A model generated the notes under the pieces. That model saw only the letters and a list, made by a program, of their open reading frames with translations. It made no database searches and was not told the origin of the DNA. From contig NC_068985.1 of assembly GCF_001194135.2 (NCBI RefSeq), positions 60,792,579 to 60,846,887 on the forward strand: DNA of 54,309 nucleotides. The letters are read 5' to 3'. This document shows, piece after piece, positions 713 to 53,928 of the stretch (the stretch's first letter is position 1; each line of letters starts with the position of its first letter). The translations under genes and the position numbers were made by a program. The DNA is from Octopus bimaculoides (lineage: Eukaryota).

Positions 713-809
713 CTGTTCATCAATTAAATGCATCTTTTCATTCTGTGCCTGTGCCAGCAATCTTTCCAGTTCAGATAGTTTCTCCATGTGGTCATTATCA
801 CTGCTCAGA
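713..809 (-). CDS. PHLDB1: PHLDB-like internal coding exon, phase 2-0: (S)LSSDNDHMEKLSELERLLAQAQNEKMHLIDEQ
   Basis: Acceptor gttttctttttcag; donor CAG|gtgaga; 97 nt. Matches recalled PHLDB2 RIEEMERLLKQAHAEKTRLLE. Phase fits both the 33134 and 10520 donors. Confidence 0.9.
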
Positions 810-9020: not shown

Positions 9021-10357
9021 AGTAAAAAGTGTATAAGGACCACTTTATCCAATGTCTTCATAGGATGGATAGGGTATGCTTTGAGGAATATTTGGCTGTT
9101 ATTTCTAACAGGTCACACCATCATGTAGAATTTCTTTTGCTGGCTGGATCTAATATAGTTAATGTGTGGCCCCAAGTTAATGAAGTAAATCTTCAATCAC
9201 ATGTGACCATCTCCTCTTGCTCAACCCATTAATGCATAAAATATAATTTCCAAATTGTCCTGCTTTTGGGACACTATGTATGAATGGGTTACAACAGTGT
9301 ATCTAAAACTACATTATCCAATGTGTTCATCTTTTTGGCAGAATGTTATTTGAGAGAGATTCTGGCTGCTTTTTCTATAGCAGGGCAAACAACTGCAATG
9401 ATGGCTTTTGGTAACCTTCTCTCCTTTTATGGGTGATTAGAACTTAGACACTGATTGTATGTCTAAGTGCTAGACAGTTTACTCAATGAGAAGAAAGTGG
9501 AGAGATAAGGTAAACTATTAGGAAAGTAGATAGAAAATAGTGGGAACACATAAGACATAGATGTGTGATGAAAATAGAATGAGAAAATAATAAGAAAATG
9601 ATATCATGACAATATCTGTGAGATATTCAGATAAAAAACATCTTAAACATATTAGTTAAGATTGTACAAAGAATACCTGGTTTATCAGTAAAATTATTAA
9701 CAAAAAAAAAAAAACATTGAAGAAACATGACAAAGTCTATATTAGCTGTAAAAATACACTGAAAAAATATTAACGATGGCCTAAATGGAAATATATAACA
9801 AAATTTATTAATTTGTTGATCAGATGCCCAATAGAGGAGTTTAACAAATGAACAGAGACAATGTAGGGTGGAGAAGATTCTTTAGTCCTGCTGCAGATAT
9901 GACAACTCCTTAAGTGTTGGTGCCAGAATAAAATACTCTTAGTACCATTCCTCTAGCTAACCATGAAAGGGTTGATGAAAGGAATGGCATCCAGAAACCA
10001 TGCAAAAACATGGAACTTAAGAGCGAGTTGTGGTTGCTGATCTGTCTCAGAAGTAACTCAAAATAAGAACTGATTTGTATCCTCACCTACCTTACACAAG
10101 ATGGACTTTGCTTTGTGCCCTCCATCAAGGCCGGAGTTGATATAATCAACTTATACCCTTGAAGGCACTGCTTCAGCCTGGTCACCGTCTAATGACTAAA
10201 ACCAGTTAAAGAATAAACAAGTTTTGCAGACATATTTCCCATATCAGCATAATCAACATTGCAAACATTTAATAGCAAACATTAGCACAATGCAATGAGA
10301 GAAGGTGGAGGATCAGTGGAGGATAAACCCCAGTATTTTACTGGCACTTTAATTTAT

Positions 10358-10399
<42 letters not shown>

Positions 10400-10519
10400 C
10401 TCAAAGTATTCAACATCAATACAGACATCACATACTTGAAAGTATTGAATATGAAACTAGAAAAATTTAATCAAATAAAAACAATTCTTTTTGTATTTGT
10501 TTTTGGTGAAAATACTCAC

Positions 10520-10653
10520 CTAAAGAAGTCCATAGGGCGGCCACAGAACCAACAATATTCCAGCTGAAAGCTTTTAGCAATTGCTTGTCTAGTACTAGTT
10601 GATGGGACTACAATTCCGTTACGTCCTGCCATGTTAAGTGGATCTGTAGCCAT
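10520..10653 (-). CDS. PHLDB1: Probable alternative first coding exon of the PHLDB-like gene: MATDPLNMAGRNGIVVPSTSTRQAIAKSFQLEYCWFCGRPMDFF
   Basis: aacATGG start at 10653 with an in-frame TGA five codons upstream; a second in-frame aacATGG; 44 open codons plus AG; consensus donor AG|GTGAGT; phase 2 matches exon 809-713. Confidence 0.7.
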
Positions 10654-13108
10654 GTTAACTCCAACGTGTCAACATTTATCAGTCCATCTTTGCAGATAGA
10701 GAATGGGACTATTTATGGATATTTACACACACAAAAATATATTTTCTTTTTTTTCACAAGAAATTACTTTTGCAAGTCCATTTCTAAATAATCACATGAA
10801 AATGTGATTTGTTCTTCATGAAGTCAGACAAGTAAAACTATCAGATAATCAATTGAATAATCCCTGAAGGATTGCAGTAAATTCTCAGGTTTCCATGTTT
10901 CCCATGATATGTAAGAGGAGTGTGGAGATTACAGGATAATCTTGGTTCTTAGCAAGAAAAGATTTCTCAAATAGTTCATATTGGCAGATAAAACAAAAAC
11001 ATGGTTTTGTTATGTGTCCTTGAGTTGGCAACAGAGAATGGTGTGTATGTGTTAGGTATGTAGGTGTTAGATGTGTATATAAACATACATACATACATAG
11101 AAGTGTAATTAAAAGATACTTGGATGGGTGAAAGTGTGTGTGCACAAAATTAATTCAGAAGAGAAATTCAGATAAGTAAAATCAGTATAACAGGAGGGAT
11201 ATATATGGAGAAACATAATAATAAGAATTTACAGACATGGCCTCATTTATATCAAAATTTATTGTTTAACTACGGGTAAACCCTGATCATGTCATTTTTT
11301 CAAAGATCCAGTATATGTTGGATTATATAGTCAATGTGTCCTTTTTTAAAAGGCTGTAAGGTGTAATTTGAAAAAGATTTTGGCTTAGTATTGCAGAGGT
11401 TTGCTTGTTGACAGTCAAAAGTCATTATTTACTGAGTGATGTAACATTGTGTACATGTTCTGGTAAAATATGGAAGCTAATTTTTTTTTTCCCAGGGAAC
11501 ATCTTAGTGATTATAGCCACACTAAAAGCTGACTTCAACTAAAGCCTAAAATTACTAAATAACTGCCAAATTATATGTAGAAAGCCAAATCACCAAGATA
11601 ATAATTACAACTAGACTAATGACCCAGTCCCCTCTATTTTCTGTTTTCTTTTAGTACTAACATAACAATTAAATTCTTTAGTTTGGGAGGTCAAATCAAT
11701 CAGAAAATTGGGAATGTATTTCTAGTAGAATTAGGAATCTTTTATCACTATAGAACAAGGGTATTTGCTGGTTAATATTAAAGAGCCACAAGTTTATAAA
11801 TGGAACTATATATGATCTGTTCCATGCCCCTTATCCTATACAAGATACAAACATGATATTAATAAACAAGAAATTGATTGCTTGTTAGAATAATGTAACA
11901 ATAGATAAGAAACTTAATCATTTAACCTAAGTGCTCAAAATGAAATTCCCAAAACAGTTGGTAAAGTGAAAGTGGAGTTTAATACTATGAATTATTCAAT
12001 GTGGGAAATCAATTGTAATTTAGAGGAAAACTTGCTATTTTTGATATTAATATAATAGATTAATAAAAAAGAAAAATTAATTCAAAAGTTTTAGGTGACT
12101 TGTTAAATCTTGTTTTTTGCATTCCCCCTTATCCAAGTTTCCCTGTTTCATGTGTATATAAATACATTGGGATCAGGTTTTCTGATTAACTGAGGGTATT
12201 AAATCTAGAAAGCTCTGTAAAACACAACCATGCAAATAAAATGGAAGGGAGCAATTTCGGCTGTCATGTGTGAAAGAATATTAGATTTTGGACAAAGGAA
12301 ATTTAGAAGAGTAATGAAATAAGGAGGGTTTATAATATGAACATCAAATACAAATTAATCAAAATACCATTGACAGTTGTTTGAGAAAGAGCTTAAACAA
12401 AGAATGGGTAATACAAAAATTGAATTTTTCATGTCAACAATGGTTGAGGTAAGACTTCGGTTAACACAGCAAAGCAAAAACCAATATATGAGGTTTTAAT
12501 TTGATTACAAAATAAAATAGGTAACAATAATTATAACAAATATGCATAATATTGACATTATTTTAGAAAAGAACTGTTTTCATTGAATTGTTATAAATAT
12601 TGAAATATATCTATGGAAATAGAGTTTGAGACTGTTTAAATTTACAAATTGATTTCAATTAGACATAAGCAACAATAACAAGTATAATGTAATAAGTTTA
12701 TGAATCTATGATACATAACAGTTGTAGGGCCTTGACGTACTTCAAAAACATCAAGGTATCAAAACAATGTTACTCAAGGAGGTAGTTTTAGAACAAGGTG
12801 CAGAACAGAATGGTATAGATAGGAACAATATTAACTTTAAGTAAAAAGGACAGGGAACTAGAAACAGTTGAAGCAACACTGAAACGAGAGAGTTAAATAA
12901 GCTGAGTGAATAGTTGGATTCTAAGAAGACAGTTTGCCCAACCAAAATAACGGAAGCACAGAACAACAACAATAATTATTTCGAAGTTTTTGAAAGGGTT
13001 CTTAAGTGTCAGAAATATTGATTTTGATTGTCAAGGAAAAAAATTTCTTTTATTGTCATAATTAAAAAAGACAAGAAAAAATTGTCAGTTTAGATTTTGA
13101 CTTTCAAC

Positions 13109-24433: not shown

Positions 24434-25653
24434 TTAGGTCATCCCATAAGTTCTGTTCAAATTTTGAAGAAAGAAAAGAAGTGATCAAATGTTGTATTTA
24501 ATTGAAATTTAATCATCAATGTACTGATTATCTATGATTTCCTTCCATCTATTTTACAAGCTTTTTAATCCCATCAATGTAAAACTCTTTTGGTTTGAAA
24601 GCGAAGAACTCTAAAATGTCAGTTTCGACCTCCTCCTGGTTTGCGAAAGTTATGTCCCCCAAATGATGCAGTAAACTACGAAACAAATGGTAGTCTGAAG
24701 GAGCAAGGTCAGGAGAATAAGGTGGAAGAAGAATTTTTTCCCAATCAAGCTCTTTGATCTTTTGTGATGTAATCTTTGCAGTGTGGGGTTGTGCATTGTC
24801 CTGATGAAACATCACTCCTTTCTGATTCACTAAAGCAGATTCTTTTTTCTTCAAAACCTGGTTCAAATGCTCTAATTGCTGACAGTAGACTTGAGCATTG
24901 ATTGCTGCAATAGGTGTTAACAATTCAAAGTGAATTACTCCTTTGCAATCTCACCAGATAAAGAGAAGAACACTTTTTCCATGAAGTTCTCTTCTCAGTT
25001 GTGGTTGAGCTTTTTCCCTTTTACCAAAGGAAGAATTCGTGAGAATGGAGAGAAGAGCAGATGTTAACTCAGGACTTGCGGTTGCTTTCGGACAATTCAT
25101 GAGGCATGCATTTTCCAAGTTTAGGAACCTTTCCAAGTTGTTCAAGATGACGATGAACAGTTGTATGGTTTGAACTAAGCTTTATTGCCAATTATTGAAC
25201 TGATAATGCAGGATTTTCTTCAAGTAATGCCTCAAGGAGCTTATCATCAAACTCATCTGGAAGTCCTGTTCGATCTTCATCTTCAAGACTGAAATCTCCA
25301 CTTCTGAATTTTGCAAACCATCTTCTGCAAGTTCTCTCATTCAAGCATTCTTTCCCAGAAACTGAGTGTATTTTGAGTCGCTTCGGCTGCAGCATTTCCT
25401 TTTTTGTACTCATAAAGCATTATGTACCTTAAATGTCCTTTGGATACTTCCATGTTAGCAAGGGTTTTAATCAAAGAAATTTTAATTCTATTATTCTGTA
25501 AAATAATATTTAATTAGTTTAAATGTACACAAATTCTCATAAGGAATCAGTTTATTGATTTTTCACAAATTCTATTAGACATTCTAAAATACCATTAAAT
25601 TTCATTAAATTTTACAAAAGGTAAAATCAGACAGAACTTATAGGATGACCTGA
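24434..25653 (-). mobile_element. Full-length defective mariner (Tc1/mariner DD34D) DNA transposon
   Basis: TIRs ttaggtcatcccataagttctgt / acagaacttataggatgacctga, each flanked by TA. Transposase fragments: HTH (RTCRRWFAKFRSGDFSLEDEDRTG), MPHELS (WVPHEL motif), HQDNAQPH...YSPDLAPSDY with 34 residues between the two Asp. Frameshifts and stops present. Confidence 0.93.
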
Positions 25654-26954: not shown

Positions 26955-27156
26955 TCTTAACAAAAACTTACTCGTCGCTAGAAGGGAACTTAACTCAATG
27001 TTAAACAATGGTAGATTTCTCCGACTTGAAAATTGTTAAAAGTTTTGGTTGAAAATGAATTTTTACCGCTATTTCCTAGTGCCTTTGGGAAAAATAAGTT
27101 GACGAAAATACAGCTAGGGTCATGACGAATGTCCTCCTAAAATGAGAGCGACATGC
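26955..27156 (+). mobile_element. CpG-retaining member of a related Helitron-like family, cut by an N gap
   Basis: gaaaattgttaaaagttttggttgaaaatg resembles 25923-25950. Confidence 0.4.
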
Positions 27157-27777
27157 NNNNNNNNNNNNNNNNNNNNNNNNNNNNNNNNNNNNNNNNNNNN
27201 NNNNNNNNNNNNNNNNNNNNNNNNNNNNNNNNNNNNNNNNNNNNNNNNNNNNNNNNNNNNNNNNNNNNNNNNNNNNNNNNNNNNNNNNNNNNNNNNNNNN
27301 NNNNNNNNNNNNNNNNNNNNNNNNNNNNNNNNNNNNNNNNNNNNNNNNNNNNNNNNNNNNNNNNNNNNNNNNNNNNNNNNNNNNNNNNNNNNNNNNNNNN
27401 NNNNNNNNNNNNNNNNNNNNNNNNNNNNNNNNNNNNNNNNNNNNNNNNNNNNNNNNNNNNNNNNNNNNNNNNNNNNNNNNNNNNNNNNNNNNNNNNNNNN
27501 NNNNNNNNNNNNNNNNNNNNNNNNNNNNNNNNNNNNNNNNNNNNNNNNTATATATATATATAAATATATTATATATATATAAATATATAGGTGCAGGAGT
27601 GGCTGTGTGGTAAGTAGCTTGCTTACCAACAACATGGTTCCGGGTTCAGTCCCACTGCGTGGCATTTTGGGCAACATGGACAACAGACATTAAATGATGA
27701 TGATGTTGTATGAATACACACACACACACACATATTGTAAGGTCATAATTATATTACAATATCAGTATAGAAGGCCA

Positions 27778-28039: not shown

Positions 28040-28460
28040 ACCTGTGGATAGGGTAGACCCAGGAACATGGGATGAAGTGATGAGAAAGGCTCTTCAGATG
28101 CTGGGCCTTACTAAAGAAATGACAAGGGATCAGGAGATGTGGTGATTTGCTCTTCTTGATAAGACATGTCAAGCTAAGTAAAATCACTATCTTCTACACA
28201 TACAGGCATGGTCTTTGAGGCACTGGTGCCTCATAAAAAGCACTCGTGCCAGTATTGTGTTAGTGCACTTATGCCAGTGCTGTGTAGAGACATGAATGCC
28301 GGAAGCATGTGAAAAGTACTCAGCCAACCCTATTAAGTGGTTGGCATTAGAAAGAGCATCCAACCATAGAACCTACGCTACAACAGACAGTTGGAATGTC
28401 AAACTGTCCAACCTATGCCAGCATGGAAAGTTGATGTTAAACAATGATGATGATGATGAT
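28040..28460 (+). mobile_element. RTE 3' end fragment with tail
   Basis: gggtagacccaggaacatgggatgaagtg (GRPRKTWDEV) ending gttaaacaatgatgatgatg. Confidence 0.7.
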
Positions 28461-29415
28461 ACATACACTCATACATATTATCATCACTGTCATTATTATC
28501 TAATGTGTACTTTTCAACAACTGCATGGATAGGACAAAACTTGCTGGGGTGGATTTTTTTTTTGGGGGGGGGTCAAAAACTTTTCCTGTATATATATACA
28601 TATCTCATTCTGTATATCTCAACTTGAAATTTTGGTATTTACTCATTTCTAAATGAACATAAAGGAACAAAATTGTCAAGAAAATGCTGAACTCTACAGG
28701 CTGTAATGTACCTGAGCACTATGCAATAAGCTCATTCTTATTATGTCATAAATTGGTAACCTGGCAGAATCGTTATTGCACTGAACAAAATGCTTAGCAG
28801 CATTCCTTCTGGCCTTTTACATTCTGTGTTCAAATGCCACTGAGATTGATTTTGTCTTTCACCCATTCAGGGTTGATAAAATAAGTACCAGACAAGTACT
28901 GGGGTCAAGGTAATTGACTTTCACCTCCACTCAAAATTGCTGAATTATTTTTATTTCAATCTCTTTTGGTGTTGGTCATCTGTGACATACAACCTACTTA
29001 GCTGATAGTATCATATCAGCTATATCCAGGTAATAGTCTATGTTTGGTCACTAAAGGCCTAGCTGTATATAGTGATGTGGTACAGCTCACTGCTGTCAGG
29101 AACAGCAGTCAGGTACTGTATCATAGACAAGCATGCAGTGCAGAGTTCAAATCCAGGGATGAGCCTGGATAACAAATAAACCAGAAAATACTATAGTGTA
29201 TCTCACTGTTAATGTCAATCTGAAGACAATGTATTGAATCTCTGCCAGCCTAAAAGATAAATGGCTATGATAATAATGAAGAAGAATCTAACAGAGAGAC
29301 TGTAACAATAATTATTGTATTGTTTAAACCAAAAGAGTATACATGTGTTTGTTCTTTATAAGCATTAAGGAGTAAGCACTGAGGAATCATAATAACAACT
29401 TAAAACTCTGTGAGA

Positions 29416-31736: not shown

Positions 31737-32049
31737 TTAAACCCAAGTCAACTGTGACTGAGAAAACTGTGACCCAAAGTATTGTGATCATATCATCTTT
31801 TTATATCAGACATGGGATTCTAATGTTCCAGTGATCTTGTAATTCCTTCAAAAAGTTTTATAGCAAATAAGAGAAATCATAAATTTGTGATAGATTGCAA
31901 GAAGTTGGTTGCATATAAAAACTAAACAGGTAATGTTATAAATCCACTCTTATATACAATGTACATTCCTTAAAAGCAAAGAACACATTAAGCGAAGACA
32001 CTTTTTGAATACAATCCATATTTTTAATTTAAATTGTGTGCAAAGATGA

Positions 32050-32910
32050 GGTCATGCACTCTATTGCATACCCTGACAACCTCTATCCCCTGAGAGAAAT
32101 GTTGGACATAAGAAGCATTGGATGTGGCTCCTCATCCATACGCAGCCATGACCATACCAGTGTGACTGCACTGGTATGGTCATGTGCTGCATATGGATGA
32201 GGAGAGTTGTGTGAAGAAGTGCCACTCCTAGACAGTAGAAGGAACCCGTGGTAGAGGTAGACCCAGGAAGACATGGGATGAGGTGGTGAAGCATGACCTT
32301 CAAACGTTGGGCCTCACAGAGGCAATGATGAAAGACCAAAACCTCTGGAGATGTGCTGTGATTTTAGAACACTCAGCAAGGAAAGTAAGATCACAGCTGT
32401 AGCCTATGCCAGTGTCGCATAGCCAGCCCACTCAAAAGTACCTTTGGATCGTAGGGCAACATACCGTGCTTGAGGAGACCTATGGAGTGAAGTACATCAT
32501 CAGCATCAAAATCAAATCAAACCACAATCAAATAGAAATTGTAGTTGTGGTTGATGCCAGCACTGCCTGACTGGCTCCCCGTGCTAGCAGCACATAAAAA
32601 GTACCATCCAAATGTGGTCGATGCAAATCTTCTTGCCCCAACTGGCTCCTGTGCCGGTGGCACGTAAAAACACCATCCAAACGTGGTCAATGCCAACACC
32701 CTCTGGCCCGTGTCGGTGGTATGTAAAAAGCACCCACTACACTCTCGGAGTGGTTGGAATTAGGAAGGGCATCCAGCTGTAGAAACCATGCCAAATCAAA
32801 TTGGAGCCTGGTGCAGCCTCCTGGCTTCCCAGACCCCAGTCGAACCATCCAACCCATGTCAGCATGGAAAACGGACGTTAAACAATGATGATGATGATGA
32901 TGATGTAACA
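32050..32910 (+). mobile_element. RTE LINE 3' end with long 3' UTR (about 60-bp subrepeats) and (GAT)n tail
   Basis: LREMLDIRSI...LHWYGHVLHMDEESCVKKCH..VEGTRGRGRPRKTWDEVVKHDLQTLGLTEAM.KD..LWRCAV; tail aacccatgtcagcatggaaaacggacgttaaacaatgatgatg. Confidence 0.85.
32128..32204. repeat. 35-bp-stem hairpin inside the RTE fragment
   Basis: ctcctcatccatacgcagccatgaccataccagtg-tgactg-cactggtatggtcatgtgctgcatatggatgaggag; one bulge and one mismatch. Confidence 0.93.
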
Positions 32911-33133
32911 GCTGGAGGGAGAGCTGTTCCAACATTAGGCCACTACTCATTATAGTGGAGTAGATGGAGCAATATGCAATAAAGAGCCTTGCTCAAGGAC
33001 ACAACACACACCACATAATTGAAGTTAAGACCTTATGATTGTAAGTCTGACACCCTAGCCTCTAGGTCATGTGCCTTCACACCAGGAAATGTAATATAAA
33101 AGAGACAACTTGGGAATGAATAGGATTTCTTAC

Positions 33134-33323
33134 CTGGTCTCTTTCTCTGAAGGTGTTTCACAGCTGCTAGCTATACTGGAATCTTCTGACTCTAAAGAGT
33201 TGAAACTTTTGCAGTTAGCTTCTCTTAGCTTGCGTTCTTCCCACTGAGCACGGCCCTCGTCTGCTGCTCGCCGCTTCAGTTCTTCAATCCGTTGTCGTTC
33301 CTGCTCCACCACAATATTGTGAG
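33134..33323 (-). CDS. PHLDB1: PHLDB-like internal coding exon, phase 1-2: (S)HNIVVEQERQRIEELKRRAADEGRAQWEERKLREANCKSFNSLESEDSSIASSCETPSEKET
   Basis: Acceptor ccatttatttttag; donor AG|gtaaga; 190 nt. EQERQRIEELKRRAADEGRAQWE matches recalled PHLDB1 EEQRRRLAELKQKAAAEAQCQWD, and FNSLESEDS matches YDTLSLESSDS. Confidence 0.9.
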
Positions 33324-47815: not shown

Positions 47816-47935
47816 CTCACTTTCTGCATCAGATGACCTTCCACTTTGGTCGTAACCCTCATCACTGACTGCTACAGAGCAGAACTGCGATAGTTCCTGT
47901 ATTTTGCGTTCCACACTTATCAGTCTTGCTTTTTC
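47816..47935 (-). CDS. PHLDB1: PHLDB1/2 (LL5)-like internal coding exon, phase 0-0: EKARLISVERKIQELSQFCSVAVSDEGYDQSGRSSDAESE
   Basis: Acceptor ctaccatctcttccag with a CTGAC branch-like motif upstream; donor GAG|gtacat; 120 nt open frame. The coiled-coil start resembles PHLDB1 QKEKEKLTVLERRY (recalled). In frame with the three exons below. Confidence 0.8.
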
Positions 47936-53267: not shown

Positions 53268-53371
<104 letters not shown>

Positions 53372-53928
53372 NNNNNNNNNNNNNNNNNNNNNNNNNNNNN
53401 NNNNNNNNNNNNNNNNNNNNNNNNNNNNNNNNNNNNNNNNNNNNNNNNNNNNNNNNNNNNNNNNNNNNNNNNNNNNNNNNNNNNNNNNNNNNNNNNNNNN
53501 NNNNNNNNNNNNNNNNNNNNNNNNNNNNNNNNNNNNNNNNNNNNNNNNNNNNNNNNNNNNNNNNNNNNNNNNNNNNNNNNNNNNNNNNNNNNNNNNNNNN
53601 NNNNNNNNNNNNNNNNNNNNNNNNNNNNNNNNNNNNNNNNNNNNNNNNNNNNNNNNNNNNNNNNNNNNNNNNNNNNNNNNNNNNNNNNNNNNNNNNNNNN
53701 NNNNNNNNNNNNNNNNNNNNNNNNNNNNNNNNNNNNNNNNNNNNNNNNNNNNNNNNNNNNNNNNNNNNNNNNNNNNNNNNNNNNNNNNNNNNNNNNNNNN
53801 NNNNNNNNNNNNNNNNNNNNNNNNNNNNNNNNNNNTATATATATGCATATATATATATATATGCATATATATGTATATACATATATGTATATACATATAT
53901 GTATATATATATACATACACATATATAT

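What the first reader, a model, noticed from the sequence alone, without database searches (positions are those of the whole stretch)
10520..10653. Hidden alternative first exon giving a short PHLDB-like isoform with a distinct CxxC-containing N-terminus
Seen: a 44-codon frame below the ORF-track cutoff, with two in-frame aacATGG starts, an in-frame upstream stop and a consensus AG|GTGAGT donor in phase 2. It joins exon 809-713 as ...YCWFCGRPMDFF-S-LSSDNDHMEKLSELERLL. It is unique, CpG-retaining sequence amid decayed repeats. Established: LL5 proteins end in a coiled coil plus a PIP3-binding PH domain. Inference: an internal promoter yields a short coiled-coil+PH isoform lacking the N-terminal scaffold, whose CWFC motif could be a lipidation or metal-binding site. 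Less likely alternative: a 75-nt phase 2-2 cassette exon from a weak acceptor at 10594.
Basis: partly seen in the sequence, partly recalled or inferred. Interest (0 to 1): 0.8.

Follow-up and report, generated by a model that had tools for sequence, protein, structure and literature searches.

The report
Conserved alternative first exon, PHLDB gene
The 44-codon frame is a real protein-coding exon, conserved across molluscs, that starts a short version of an LL5/PHLDB membrane-scaffold protein; related molluscs already have it annotated, so it is sound but fairly ordinary, apart from an undescribed invariant CWFCGRPM motif.

Summary
Observation confirmed. The minus-strand frame 10653-10520 has two aacATGG starts, an in-frame TGA six codons upstream and a TAG|GTGAGT donor in phase 2. 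It joins exon 809-713 in frame.

An ORF this size is common by chance here. Comparison makes it real:
- On a 780-kb contig of a distant relative, this ORF is the only alignable sequence within 20 kb. It shows purifying selection (differences 9/4/24 by codon position; pN 0.13, pS 0.84).
- That copy lies 27 kb upstream of a PHLDB PH-domain exon, on the same strand.
- The clam Mactra antiquata has an annotated 281-aa protein of this form: a GKNG...CWFCGRPM first exon, an 809-type exon, coiled coil and PH. The intron phase and the split AG|T Ser codon are the same.
- Gastropod PHLDB proteins place CWFCGRPM directly before the same exon.

Window exon 33323-33133 matches the long mussel form at 92% and has the same donor phase. 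No coil or PH exon lies between it and 10653, so both 5' exons feed exon 809 of one gene.

Promoter use, expression and the role of the motif remain untested. I rate it a new member of a known kind, of modest interest.

The parts
10520..10653 (-). Alternative first coding exon (coding part): M1-F44 plus the first two bases (AG) of a split Ser codon
   Evidence: Searches give the sequence. Searches show conservation and purifying selection against L001. Searches show orthologous exons in Mactra, L004, L006 and gastropods.
10669..10671 (-). In-frame TGA six codons upstream of M1, which closes the frame to any upstream coding exon
   Evidence: L001 has a stop 10 codons upstream and Mactra has one 3 codons upstream.
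10612..10632 (-). N-terminal motif MAGRNGI, an instance of the mollusc consensus phi-x-G-[KR]-N-G-[IVF]. M8 occupies a conserved hydrophobic position, so M1 is the likelier start.
   Evidence: Alignment A3.
10531..10554 (-). Octapeptide CWFCGRPM, unchanged in every full-length homologue. It is preceded by I-A-x-[SG]-[FY]-x-L-[ED]-x.
10514..10519 (-). 5' splice site GTGAGT. The exon ends ...TTTAG, in phase 2.
   Evidence: One search shows AG|GTRAG or AG|GTAAT in the same phase in all five loci.
713..809 (-). Shared second coding exon of 97 nt, (S)LSSDNDHMEKLSELERLLAQAQNEKMHLIDEQ, which begins the coiled coil. Its acceptor is used by both 5' exons.
   Evidence: Searches show the Mactra exon 2 has the same length and the same phases.
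33133..33323 (-). Exon B, the upstream exon of the long LL5-like isoform: ..EQERQRIEELKRRAADEGRAQWEERKLREANCKSFNSLESEDSSIASSCETPSEKET plus AG|GTAAGA. Its donor has the same phase as 10520.
   Evidence: Searches give 92% identity over 59 aa to P0034 and 82% over 68 aa to Mytilus P0033.

Best explanation
Window 10653-10520 (minus strand) is the start-codon exon of a second, short transcript of a mollusc LL5/PHLDB-like gene. Translation begins at M1 (10653). The exon then splices from its phase-2 donor at 10520 across a 9.7-kb intron to exon 809-713. The long isoform reaches that same exon from exon B (33323-33133).

Judging from the orthologues, the product is about 275-280 aa. It would consist of a 44-aa N-terminal peptide with two conserved motifs (phi-x-G-[KR]-N-G-phi and I-A-x-S-[FY]-x-L-E-x-CWFCGRPM), a coiled coil of about 77 residues, and the C-terminal PH domain. 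In vertebrate family members that PH domain binds PIP3. The short form lacks the whole N-terminal scaffold of the long form.

Shown here: the exon is real and coding, the junction is correct, and downstream exons are shared with the long form.

Inferred: transcription starts at an internal promoter near 10.7 kb. I also infer that the N-terminal peptide is a partner- or metal-dependent linear motif rather than a folded domain. My preferred mechanism is that the CxxCG knuckles of two chains, brought together by the parallel coiled coil, share one Zn ion and form an intermolecular clasp. Dual S-acylation of the two Cys is the main alternative. In either case the short form would act as a membrane-bound competitor or regulator of the long scaffold.
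For: - Searches give the anatomy.
- the only relative of the ORF in the first search is a 45-aa ORF on ENA contig ctg123308l. Within 20 kb of that contig, only the ORF aligns to the window (76% nt, 78% aa, tblastx E 2e-20).
- differences by codon position are 9/4/24, pN is 0.126 and pS is 0.84. The flanks are 0.59-0.62 identical, against 0.595 for shuffles.
- on the same contig and strand, a coil exon lies 17.6 kb downstream and the PH exon 26.7 kb downstream.
- gastropod proteins named PHLDB2, or PH domain-containing protein, read ...IAASYQLEYCWFCGRPMPPFGT-SLSGGEEHLEKLAELEKLLAQAQ...PH.
- Mactra antiquata P0031 (281 aa) has four coding exons. Exon 1 ends AGC AG|GTAATT and exon 2 starts T GTA AGT, so the phase and the split codon are identical. 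Exon 2 is 97 nt, as in the window.
- L006 holds the whole four-exon gene within 9.2 kb.
- the donor and phase are conserved in five loci.
- exon B matches the long form, and the window holds no other downstream exon set.
- in the AlphaFold2 model of P0031, residues 1-56 have low confidence, the helix 57-133 has pLDDT above 90, and the PH domain is confident.
- PMC10337942 reports self-association of full-length LL5beta and attributes it to coiled coils.
Against: I have no transcript evidence for this species: no RNA-seq, CAGE or EST data were available. The ATAAATA at 10716-10710 is the only promoter-like feature, and it is unremarkable in sequence that is 66% A+T. The coil and PH exons of this gene lie outside the window, so the size of the short product is taken from orthologues.

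For the zinc-clasp idea, each chain has only two Cys, no other ligand is conserved, and the monomer model leaves the motif disordered. For S-acylation, invariance of all eight residues is more than acylation sites usually need. The PDB profile hits to metal knuckles (Rlp24 'CFFCGRPA', HycF 'CIFCGR') are at chance level, with E values of 0.05-0.4.
Confidence: 0.85

Rival explanations
1. It is a 75-nt cassette exon (10594-10520) spliced between exon B and exon 809. This would insert TRQAIAKSFQLEYCWFCGRPMDFF into the long isoform, either instead of or in addition to first-exon use.
For: The AG at 10596-10595 is phase-compatible with the donor of exon B, and an AG sits at the same place in L001. 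In gastropods the CWFC motif follows a long N-terminal region.
Against: The sequence upstream of that AG has no polypyrimidine tract. In both species the AG simply belongs to a conserved AGT Ser codon. Codons 8-20, upstream of it, show 6 synonymous changes and 1 replacement, so they are translated. M1 aligns with M1 of the bivalve proteins. In gastropods the long region and the motif form one exon that starts at its own ATG and has no exon-B-like sequence.
Confidence: 0.08
2. It is the first exon of an independent gene that only appears to share exon 809. On this reading the long LL5-like gene does not use exon 809 in this species.
For: In Mactra and L006, no exon-B-like sequence lies within 10 kb upstream of the CWFC exon. 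The PH exons also fall into two sequence types, MGNKFKTW and MGGKIKTW, which could mean that some molluscs have two paralogues.
Against: In the window, exon B is followed on the same strand only by the CWFC exon and exon 809. No other 809-type, coil or PH exon is present. The B->809 junction reproduces the reading ..PSEKET-SLSS..EKL.. found in Mytilus P0033 and in the spliced 2.8-kb Logan contig product P0034. The donor phases are identical.
Confidence: 0.05
3. It is a chance open frame or a decayed repeat in an intron, with a fortuitous GT.
For: The minus strand has 184 stop-free stretches of at least 45 codons. Pfam finds no family.
Against: Conservation is confined to the frame, with substitutions concentrated at third positions. 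Orthologous exons occur in at least five other genomes, with the same donor phase. The exon is annotated as coding sequence in Mactra and in gastropods.
Confidence: 0.02

Closest known systems
Mactra antiquata 'Pleckstrin [homolog]y-like domain B member 1' (P0031, 281 aa; GCA_047288015.1, CM103822.1)
   Same: It has the same first-exon design: M1, phi-x-G-K-N-G-phi, then IAxSFxLExCWFCGRPM. The phase-2 donor splits an AG|T Ser codon in the same way. The second exon is also 97 nt, and coil and PH exons follow.
   Different: The spacer between the two motifs is 6 residues longer. It is 50% identical to the window peptide over the aligned 38 residues. No long-isoform exon was seen within 10 kb upstream.
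Heterobranch gastropod PHLDB2-like or 'serine-rich adhesin' proteins (Plakobranchus GFO46565.1, Elysia GFS08687.1, Biomphalaria KAK6963507.1)
   Same: They start MNP(R/K)VSP..GKNG, and IAASYQLEYCWFCGRPM lies immediately before the SLSGGEEHLEKLAELE(K/R)LLAQAQ exon, the coiled coil and the PH domain.
   Different: A Ser-rich insert of 500-850 aa separates the two motifs within the first exon, so these proteins are 800-1100 aa long rather than about 280 aa.
Vertebrate LL5alpha/LL5beta (PHLDB1/PHLDB2) and PHLDB3
   Same: The C-terminal coiled coil plus PH architecture is the same. The window's exon B and exon 809 align to the vertebrate segment ..IEEQ(K/R)RRLAELKQ(K/R)AAAEAQ.QWE...YDTLSLESSDS...KIEEMEK(M/L)LKEA. 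PHLDB1 and PHLDB2 bind phosphoinositides and organise cortical platforms (PMC7278972, PMC10337942).
   Different: No vertebrate sequence with the GKNG...CWFCGRPM module was found among 1.84 billion cluster representatives at E<=1e-3. PHLDB3 is a separate, shorter paralogue, not an alternative-promoter product.
Rad50 zinc hook and Lck-CD4 zinc clasp (intermolecular Zn(Cys)4 sites built from one CxxC per chain)
   Same: The comparison concerns mechanism only. There is one CxxC per chain next to a dimerising coiled coil, and the CxxCG pattern is typical of metal knuckles. This rests on established knowledge and inference, not on a test made here.
   Different: There is no sequence relationship. 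Metal binding was not tested. In Rad50 the hook sits at the apex of an antiparallel coiled coil, whereas here the motif lies about 15 residues N-terminal to the coil.

Membership tests
PHLDB / LL5 family | C-terminal PH domain (Pfam PF00169) | not testable with these tools
   The PH exon lies beyond position 1 of the window. In the nearest relative it is on the same contig and strand, 26.7 kb downstream of the orthologous exon. Mactra P0031 scores 67.8 bits to PF00169.
PHLDB / LL5 family | Coiled coil directly upstream of the PH domain, beginning ..EKLxELExLLAQAQxEK / KIEEMEKxLKEA | tested here: met
   Exon 809-713 is 66-74% identical to the corresponding exon of P0033 and P0034. The AlphaFold2 model of P0031 has a helix at 57-133 with pLDDT above 90.
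PHLDB / LL5 family | Long-isoform segment before the coil (..ELKxxAAxExxxQWE....SLESxDS..) | tested here: met
   Exon B (33323-33133) is 92% identical to P0034 and 82% to Mytilus P0033, and it aligns with vertebrate PHLDB1/2.
Mollusc short PHLDB isoform (Mactra P0031 type) | First coding exon with M1, phi-x-G-[KR]-N-G-phi and I-A-x-[SG]-[FY]-x-L-[ED]-x-CWFCGRPM | tested here: met
   Alignment A3. The profile search gave 16 hits at E<=1e-3.
Mollusc short PHLDB isoform (Mactra P0031 type) | Phase-2 donor 3-4 codons after the motif, joining the 97-nt SLSS..EKL exon | tested here: met
Mollusc short PHLDB isoform (Mactra P0031 type) | Transcript and protein actually produced in this species | not testable with these tools
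   No transcript data for this genome were available. The look-up by exact product found nothing on record.
Structural zinc site (Cys4 / Cys2His2 knuckle pair) | Four metal ligands available within one chain | tested here: not met
   Only C34 and C37 are conserved in the N-terminal peptide. No further conserved Cys or His lies before the coil. Pfam finds no zinc-finger family even at E<=10. A site shared between two chains remains possible but is untested.
S-acylated membrane anchor | Cys residues shown to carry acyl groups | not testable with these tools
   This needs acyl-biotin exchange or metabolic labelling. No sequence consensus exists that could be tested here.

The most novel reading that the evidence does not exclude
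The bipartite peptide (phi-x-G-[KR]-N-G-phi ... I-A-x-S-[FY]-x-L-E-x-CWFCGRPM) may be an undescribed functional module of PHLDB proteins, present across molluscs. Two roles fit the sequence. Two chains of the coiled-coil dimer could share a zinc ion to form a clasp. Alternatively, the two Cys could carry acyl groups and anchor the protein in the membrane. Either would make the short isoform a PIP3-independent cortical tether, or a dominant-negative regulator of the long LL5 scaffold. In cephalopods one gene would then switch between the two forms by promoter choice.
Probability: 0.25. Interest if true: 0.55.

Novelty: new member of a known kind. Interest (0 to 1): 0.3.

Why it matters
The result adds a well-supported second 5' exon and a short isoform to the gene model of an LL5/PHLDB cortical scaffold gene. 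It also shows that a frame below the ORF cutoff can be validated from comparative data alone. The wider point is the invariant CWFCGRPM octapeptide and its GKNG partner motif. They are conserved across bivalves, gastropods and this genome, yet the octapeptide's core (CWFCG) appears in no paper of the searched library, and no Pfam family matches the peptide. If the motif proves to be a metal clasp or a lipid anchor, it would indicate a short, membrane-bound LL5 form that could counteract or localise the long form.

Tried and rejected
(1) Origin by exon duplication. A tblastn hit suggested that exon B (REANCKSFNSLE) and the new exon (R[EQ]AIAKSF[NQ]LE) share a motif. Profile-profile comparison of the two exon families found no relation (hhalign probability 0.2), so I dropped the idea.

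(2) Pfam scans of the peptide, of the joined 77 aa and of other candidate exons found nothing relevant.

(3) A profile search of the PDB gave only chance-level hits.

(4) A scan of JGI metagenome contigs with the motif patterns found no confirmed relative.

(5) I tried to walk along contig ctg123308l to see the 6.7-kb gap where the 809-type exon of the relative should lie.

(6) The locus of Mytilus P0033 is not on record, so the test of long and short forms in one bivalve gene could not be made.

(7) The first word-indexed protein search returned a single candidate. Later searches showed that this index misses many true relatives, so its silence about annotated cephalopod proteins carries no weight.

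(8) Candidate exon A (47935-47816) looks coding, but it has no homology support. It ends in phase 0 while exon B needs one base from the preceding exon, so the two cannot join directly. I therefore left it out of the parts list.

Full report
**What is in the sequence**

On the minus strand, 10653-10520 reads MATDPLNMAGRNGIVVPSTSTRQAIAKSFQLEYCWFCGRPMDFF followed by AG|GTGAGT. Both ATGs sit in an aacATGG context. A TGA closes the frame six codons upstream of the first ATG. The exon ends with two bases of a codon.

Exon 809-713 starts with T behind a ttttctttttcag acceptor. The join therefore gives AG|T, which is Ser, and the frame continues as LSSDNDHMEKLSELERLLAQAQNEKMHLIDEQ. The stretch is unique within the window. 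It has slightly more CpG than the background (observed/expected 0.46 against 0.20), but that rests on three CpGs.

By itself, however, it is not above chance: the minus strand has 184 stop-free stretches of at least 45 codons.

**Is it a real exon?**

The first protein search found one relative, a 45-aa ORF (P0001) on a 779,722-bp ENA contig. I compared 20 kb around that ORF (L001) with the whole window:
- Microsatellites aside, only the ORF aligns, at 76% nucleotide and 78% amino-acid identity (tblastx E 2e-20).
- The 150 nt on either side are 0.59-0.62 identical, which matches shuffled sequence at 0.595.
- Within the ORF the differences fall 9/4/24 by codon position. pN is 0.126, and pS is 0.84, which is saturated.
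- The start codon, the second Met and an AG|GTAAGA donor in the same phase are all kept.

This is the signature of a coding exon maintained across a deep divergence. All three reading frames entering from upstream meet stops (sequence), so it cannot be an internal coding exon of the long isoform from any acceptor upstream of the ATG.

**Which gene, and which junction?**

I searched 1.84 billion cluster representatives with a profile of the two ORFs. This gave 16 hits at E<=1e-3.

*Long hits.* These are gastropod proteins from Plakobranchus, Elysia and Biomphalaria. Their sources name them PHLDB member 2, PH domain-containing protein or, misleadingly, serine-rich adhesin. They read ...KKESIAASYQLEYCWFCGRPMPPFGT-SLSGGEEHLEKLAELEKLLAQAQSEK..., followed by a coiled coil and a PH domain. 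The motif therefore sits directly before the homologue of window exon 809-713.

*The clam protein.* A second search returned Mactra antiquata P0031. This is an annotated 281-aa protein that reads MEPGKVNQFRGKNGFRVPPQNLELEVEKKHRIALSFNLEHCWFCGRPMTPNS-SVSSGEDNLEKLQELERLLAQAQ..., then coil and PH. Its locus (L003) has four coding exons:
- Exon 1 ends AGC AG|GTAATT.
- Exon 2 begins ttacag|T GTA AGT and is 97 nt long.
- The intron phase, the split AG|T Ser codon and the length of exon 2 are the same as in the window.

*Other loci.* Another bivalve-like locus (L006) holds the same four exons within 9.2 kb. In all five loci examined, the donor follows the motif by 3-4 codons, in phase 2.

*Synteny.* On the P0001 contig, a coil exon lies 17.6 kb downstream of the exon and the PH exon lies 26.7 kb downstream, both on the same strand. 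The 809-type exon of that species must lie in a 6.7-kb stretch I could not fetch.

**Is it alternative to the long form?**

Window 33323-33133 encodes ..EQERQRIEELKRRAADEGRAQWEERKLREANCKSFNSLESEDSSIASSCETPSEKET followed by AG|GTAAGA.
- It is 92% identical over 59 aa to P0034, and 82% over 68 aa to Mytilus P0033.
- Both proteins continue ..PSEKET(T)-SLSSGED.LEK..ELERLLAQAQ.
- It aligns with the corresponding stretch of vertebrate PHLDB1/2.
- Its donor has the same phase and the same last two bases as the donor at 10520.
- tblastn with the full short and long mollusc proteins finds no other 809-type, coil or PH exon in the window.

The long transcript must therefore skip over 10653-10520 to reach 809. 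The two 5' exons are alternatives within one gene.

**The cassette alternative**

An AG at 10596-10595 would let a 75-nt exon join exon B in frame, and the same AG exists in L001. Three points count against this. The AG is simply part of a conserved AGT codon. It has no pyrimidine tract upstream. Codons 8-20, which lie upstream of it, show six synonymous changes and one replacement.

M1 aligns with M1 of the bivalve proteins. M8 falls on a conserved hydrophobic position of the motif phi-x-G-[KR]-N-G-phi. First-exon use from M1 is therefore the main reading. An extra cassette isoform cannot be excluded.

**What the peptide might do**

The alignment defines two motifs:
- an N-terminal phi-x-G-[KR]-N-G-[IVF];
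- I-A-x-[SG]-[FY]-x-L-[ED]-x-C-W-F-C-G-R-P-M, whose last eight residues are invariant.

The spacer between them is 8 residues here. In heterobranch gastropods it is 500-850 Ser-rich residues, so the two motifs behave as separate elements.

Other tests gave little direct information on function:
- AlphaFold2 on the Mactra protein gives pLDDT 43-58 for residues 1-56, with the octapeptide disordered. The helix 57-133 scores above 90 and the PH domain is confident. As a monomer, the N-terminus is therefore a linear motif and not a folded domain.
- Pfam has no matching family.
- No paper in the library contains 'CWFCG'.
- A PDB profile search gives only chance-level hits. Two of them are metal knuckles, the Rlp24 N-terminus IENCFFCGRPA and HycF FNLGHCIFCGR. 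I treat these as a resemblance only.

*Inference.* CxxCG is a typical metal-knuckle pattern, but each chain offers only two ligands. A site would therefore need two chains, and the adjacent coiled coil could provide them. Self-association of full-length LL5beta, attributed to its coiled coils, is reported in PMC10337942. S-acylation of the two Cys is the main alternative. In either case the short form keeps the PH domain, which binds phosphoinositides in the vertebrate family (PMC7278972), and loses the scaffold region. It could then act as a membrane-bound competitor or regulator. None of this has been tested.

**Comparison and novelty**

The gene belongs to the PHLDB/LL5 family by its exon-B segment and the start of its coiled coil. 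Its PH exon lies outside the window. The exon is an orthologue of first exons already annotated in a clam and in several gastropods, so the kind is known in databases although undescribed in the literature. I could not check whether this genome's own annotation has it. The first word-indexed search proved too insensitive to be informative on that point. No relative outside molluscs or unnamed contigs appeared at E<=1e-3.

I rate it a new member of a known kind, with interest 0.3. It is a sound gene-model addition that also brings out a small, conserved, unexplained motif.

Noticed in passing
window 33133-33323 (-): Exon B is extremely conserved. RRAADEGRAQWEERKLREANCKSFNSLESEDSS(I/V)ASSCETPSEKET is identical but for one residue between this window, Mytilus galloprovincialis P0033 and P0034. 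That is tighter than the PH domain, which is about 80% identical among the mollusc PH exons compared. It suggests an important, uncharacterised interaction segment of the long LL5 form.
   Followed up: partly
L006 10107-10606 and L005 10188-10811: In two bivalve-like ENA contigs, the 3' 72 nt of the CWFC exon plus the first 10 nt of the intron (donor included) form a tandem array with an 82-bp period. L006 has 6 copies at 95% identity and L005 has about 8. This places several motif-plus-donor copies, in shifting frames, inside the intron.
   Followed up: partly
window 24552-25419 (-): A Mos1/mariner-type transposase remnant. Pfam matches Transposase_1 and DDE_3 at 24552-24950 and HTH_48 at 25195-25419. 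It is split over frames and lies inside the large intron of the PHLDB-like gene.
   Followed up: yes
window 47816-47935 (-): A candidate upstream exon, ..EKARLISVERKIQELSQFCSVAVSDEGYDQSGRSSDAESE, with a tccag| acceptor and a GAG|gtaca donor. It has no homology support. Its phase 0 end is incompatible with a direct join to exon B, so at least one further exon would be needed between them.
   Followed up: partly
window ~27150-27560 and ~53370-53840: Assembly gaps (runs of N) flanked by (TA)n, (CA)n and (TATG)-like microsatellites. Microsatellites are frequent throughout the window, for example at 10352-10398 just downstream of the exon.
   Followed up: no
window 32000-33000 and 28400-28570 (-): A local G+C rise (0.47) next to exon B. 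It contains a repeated element that also occurs near 28.5 kb; both copies translate to ..HHHHH.CLTS.FHA.(M/I)GW... Pfam finds no family. It is probably a dispersed repeat and not a CpG island.
   Followed up: no
proteins P0033/P0034/P0045 versus P0031/L006/P0003: Mollusc PH exons fall into two sequence types, KMGNKFKTW and KMGG(K/R)IKTW. In bivalves and gastropods the CWFC exon is found with the second type. On the contig of the window's nearest relative it lies upstream of the first type. Some molluscs may have two paralogues where this lineage has one gene with two promoters.
   Followed up: no
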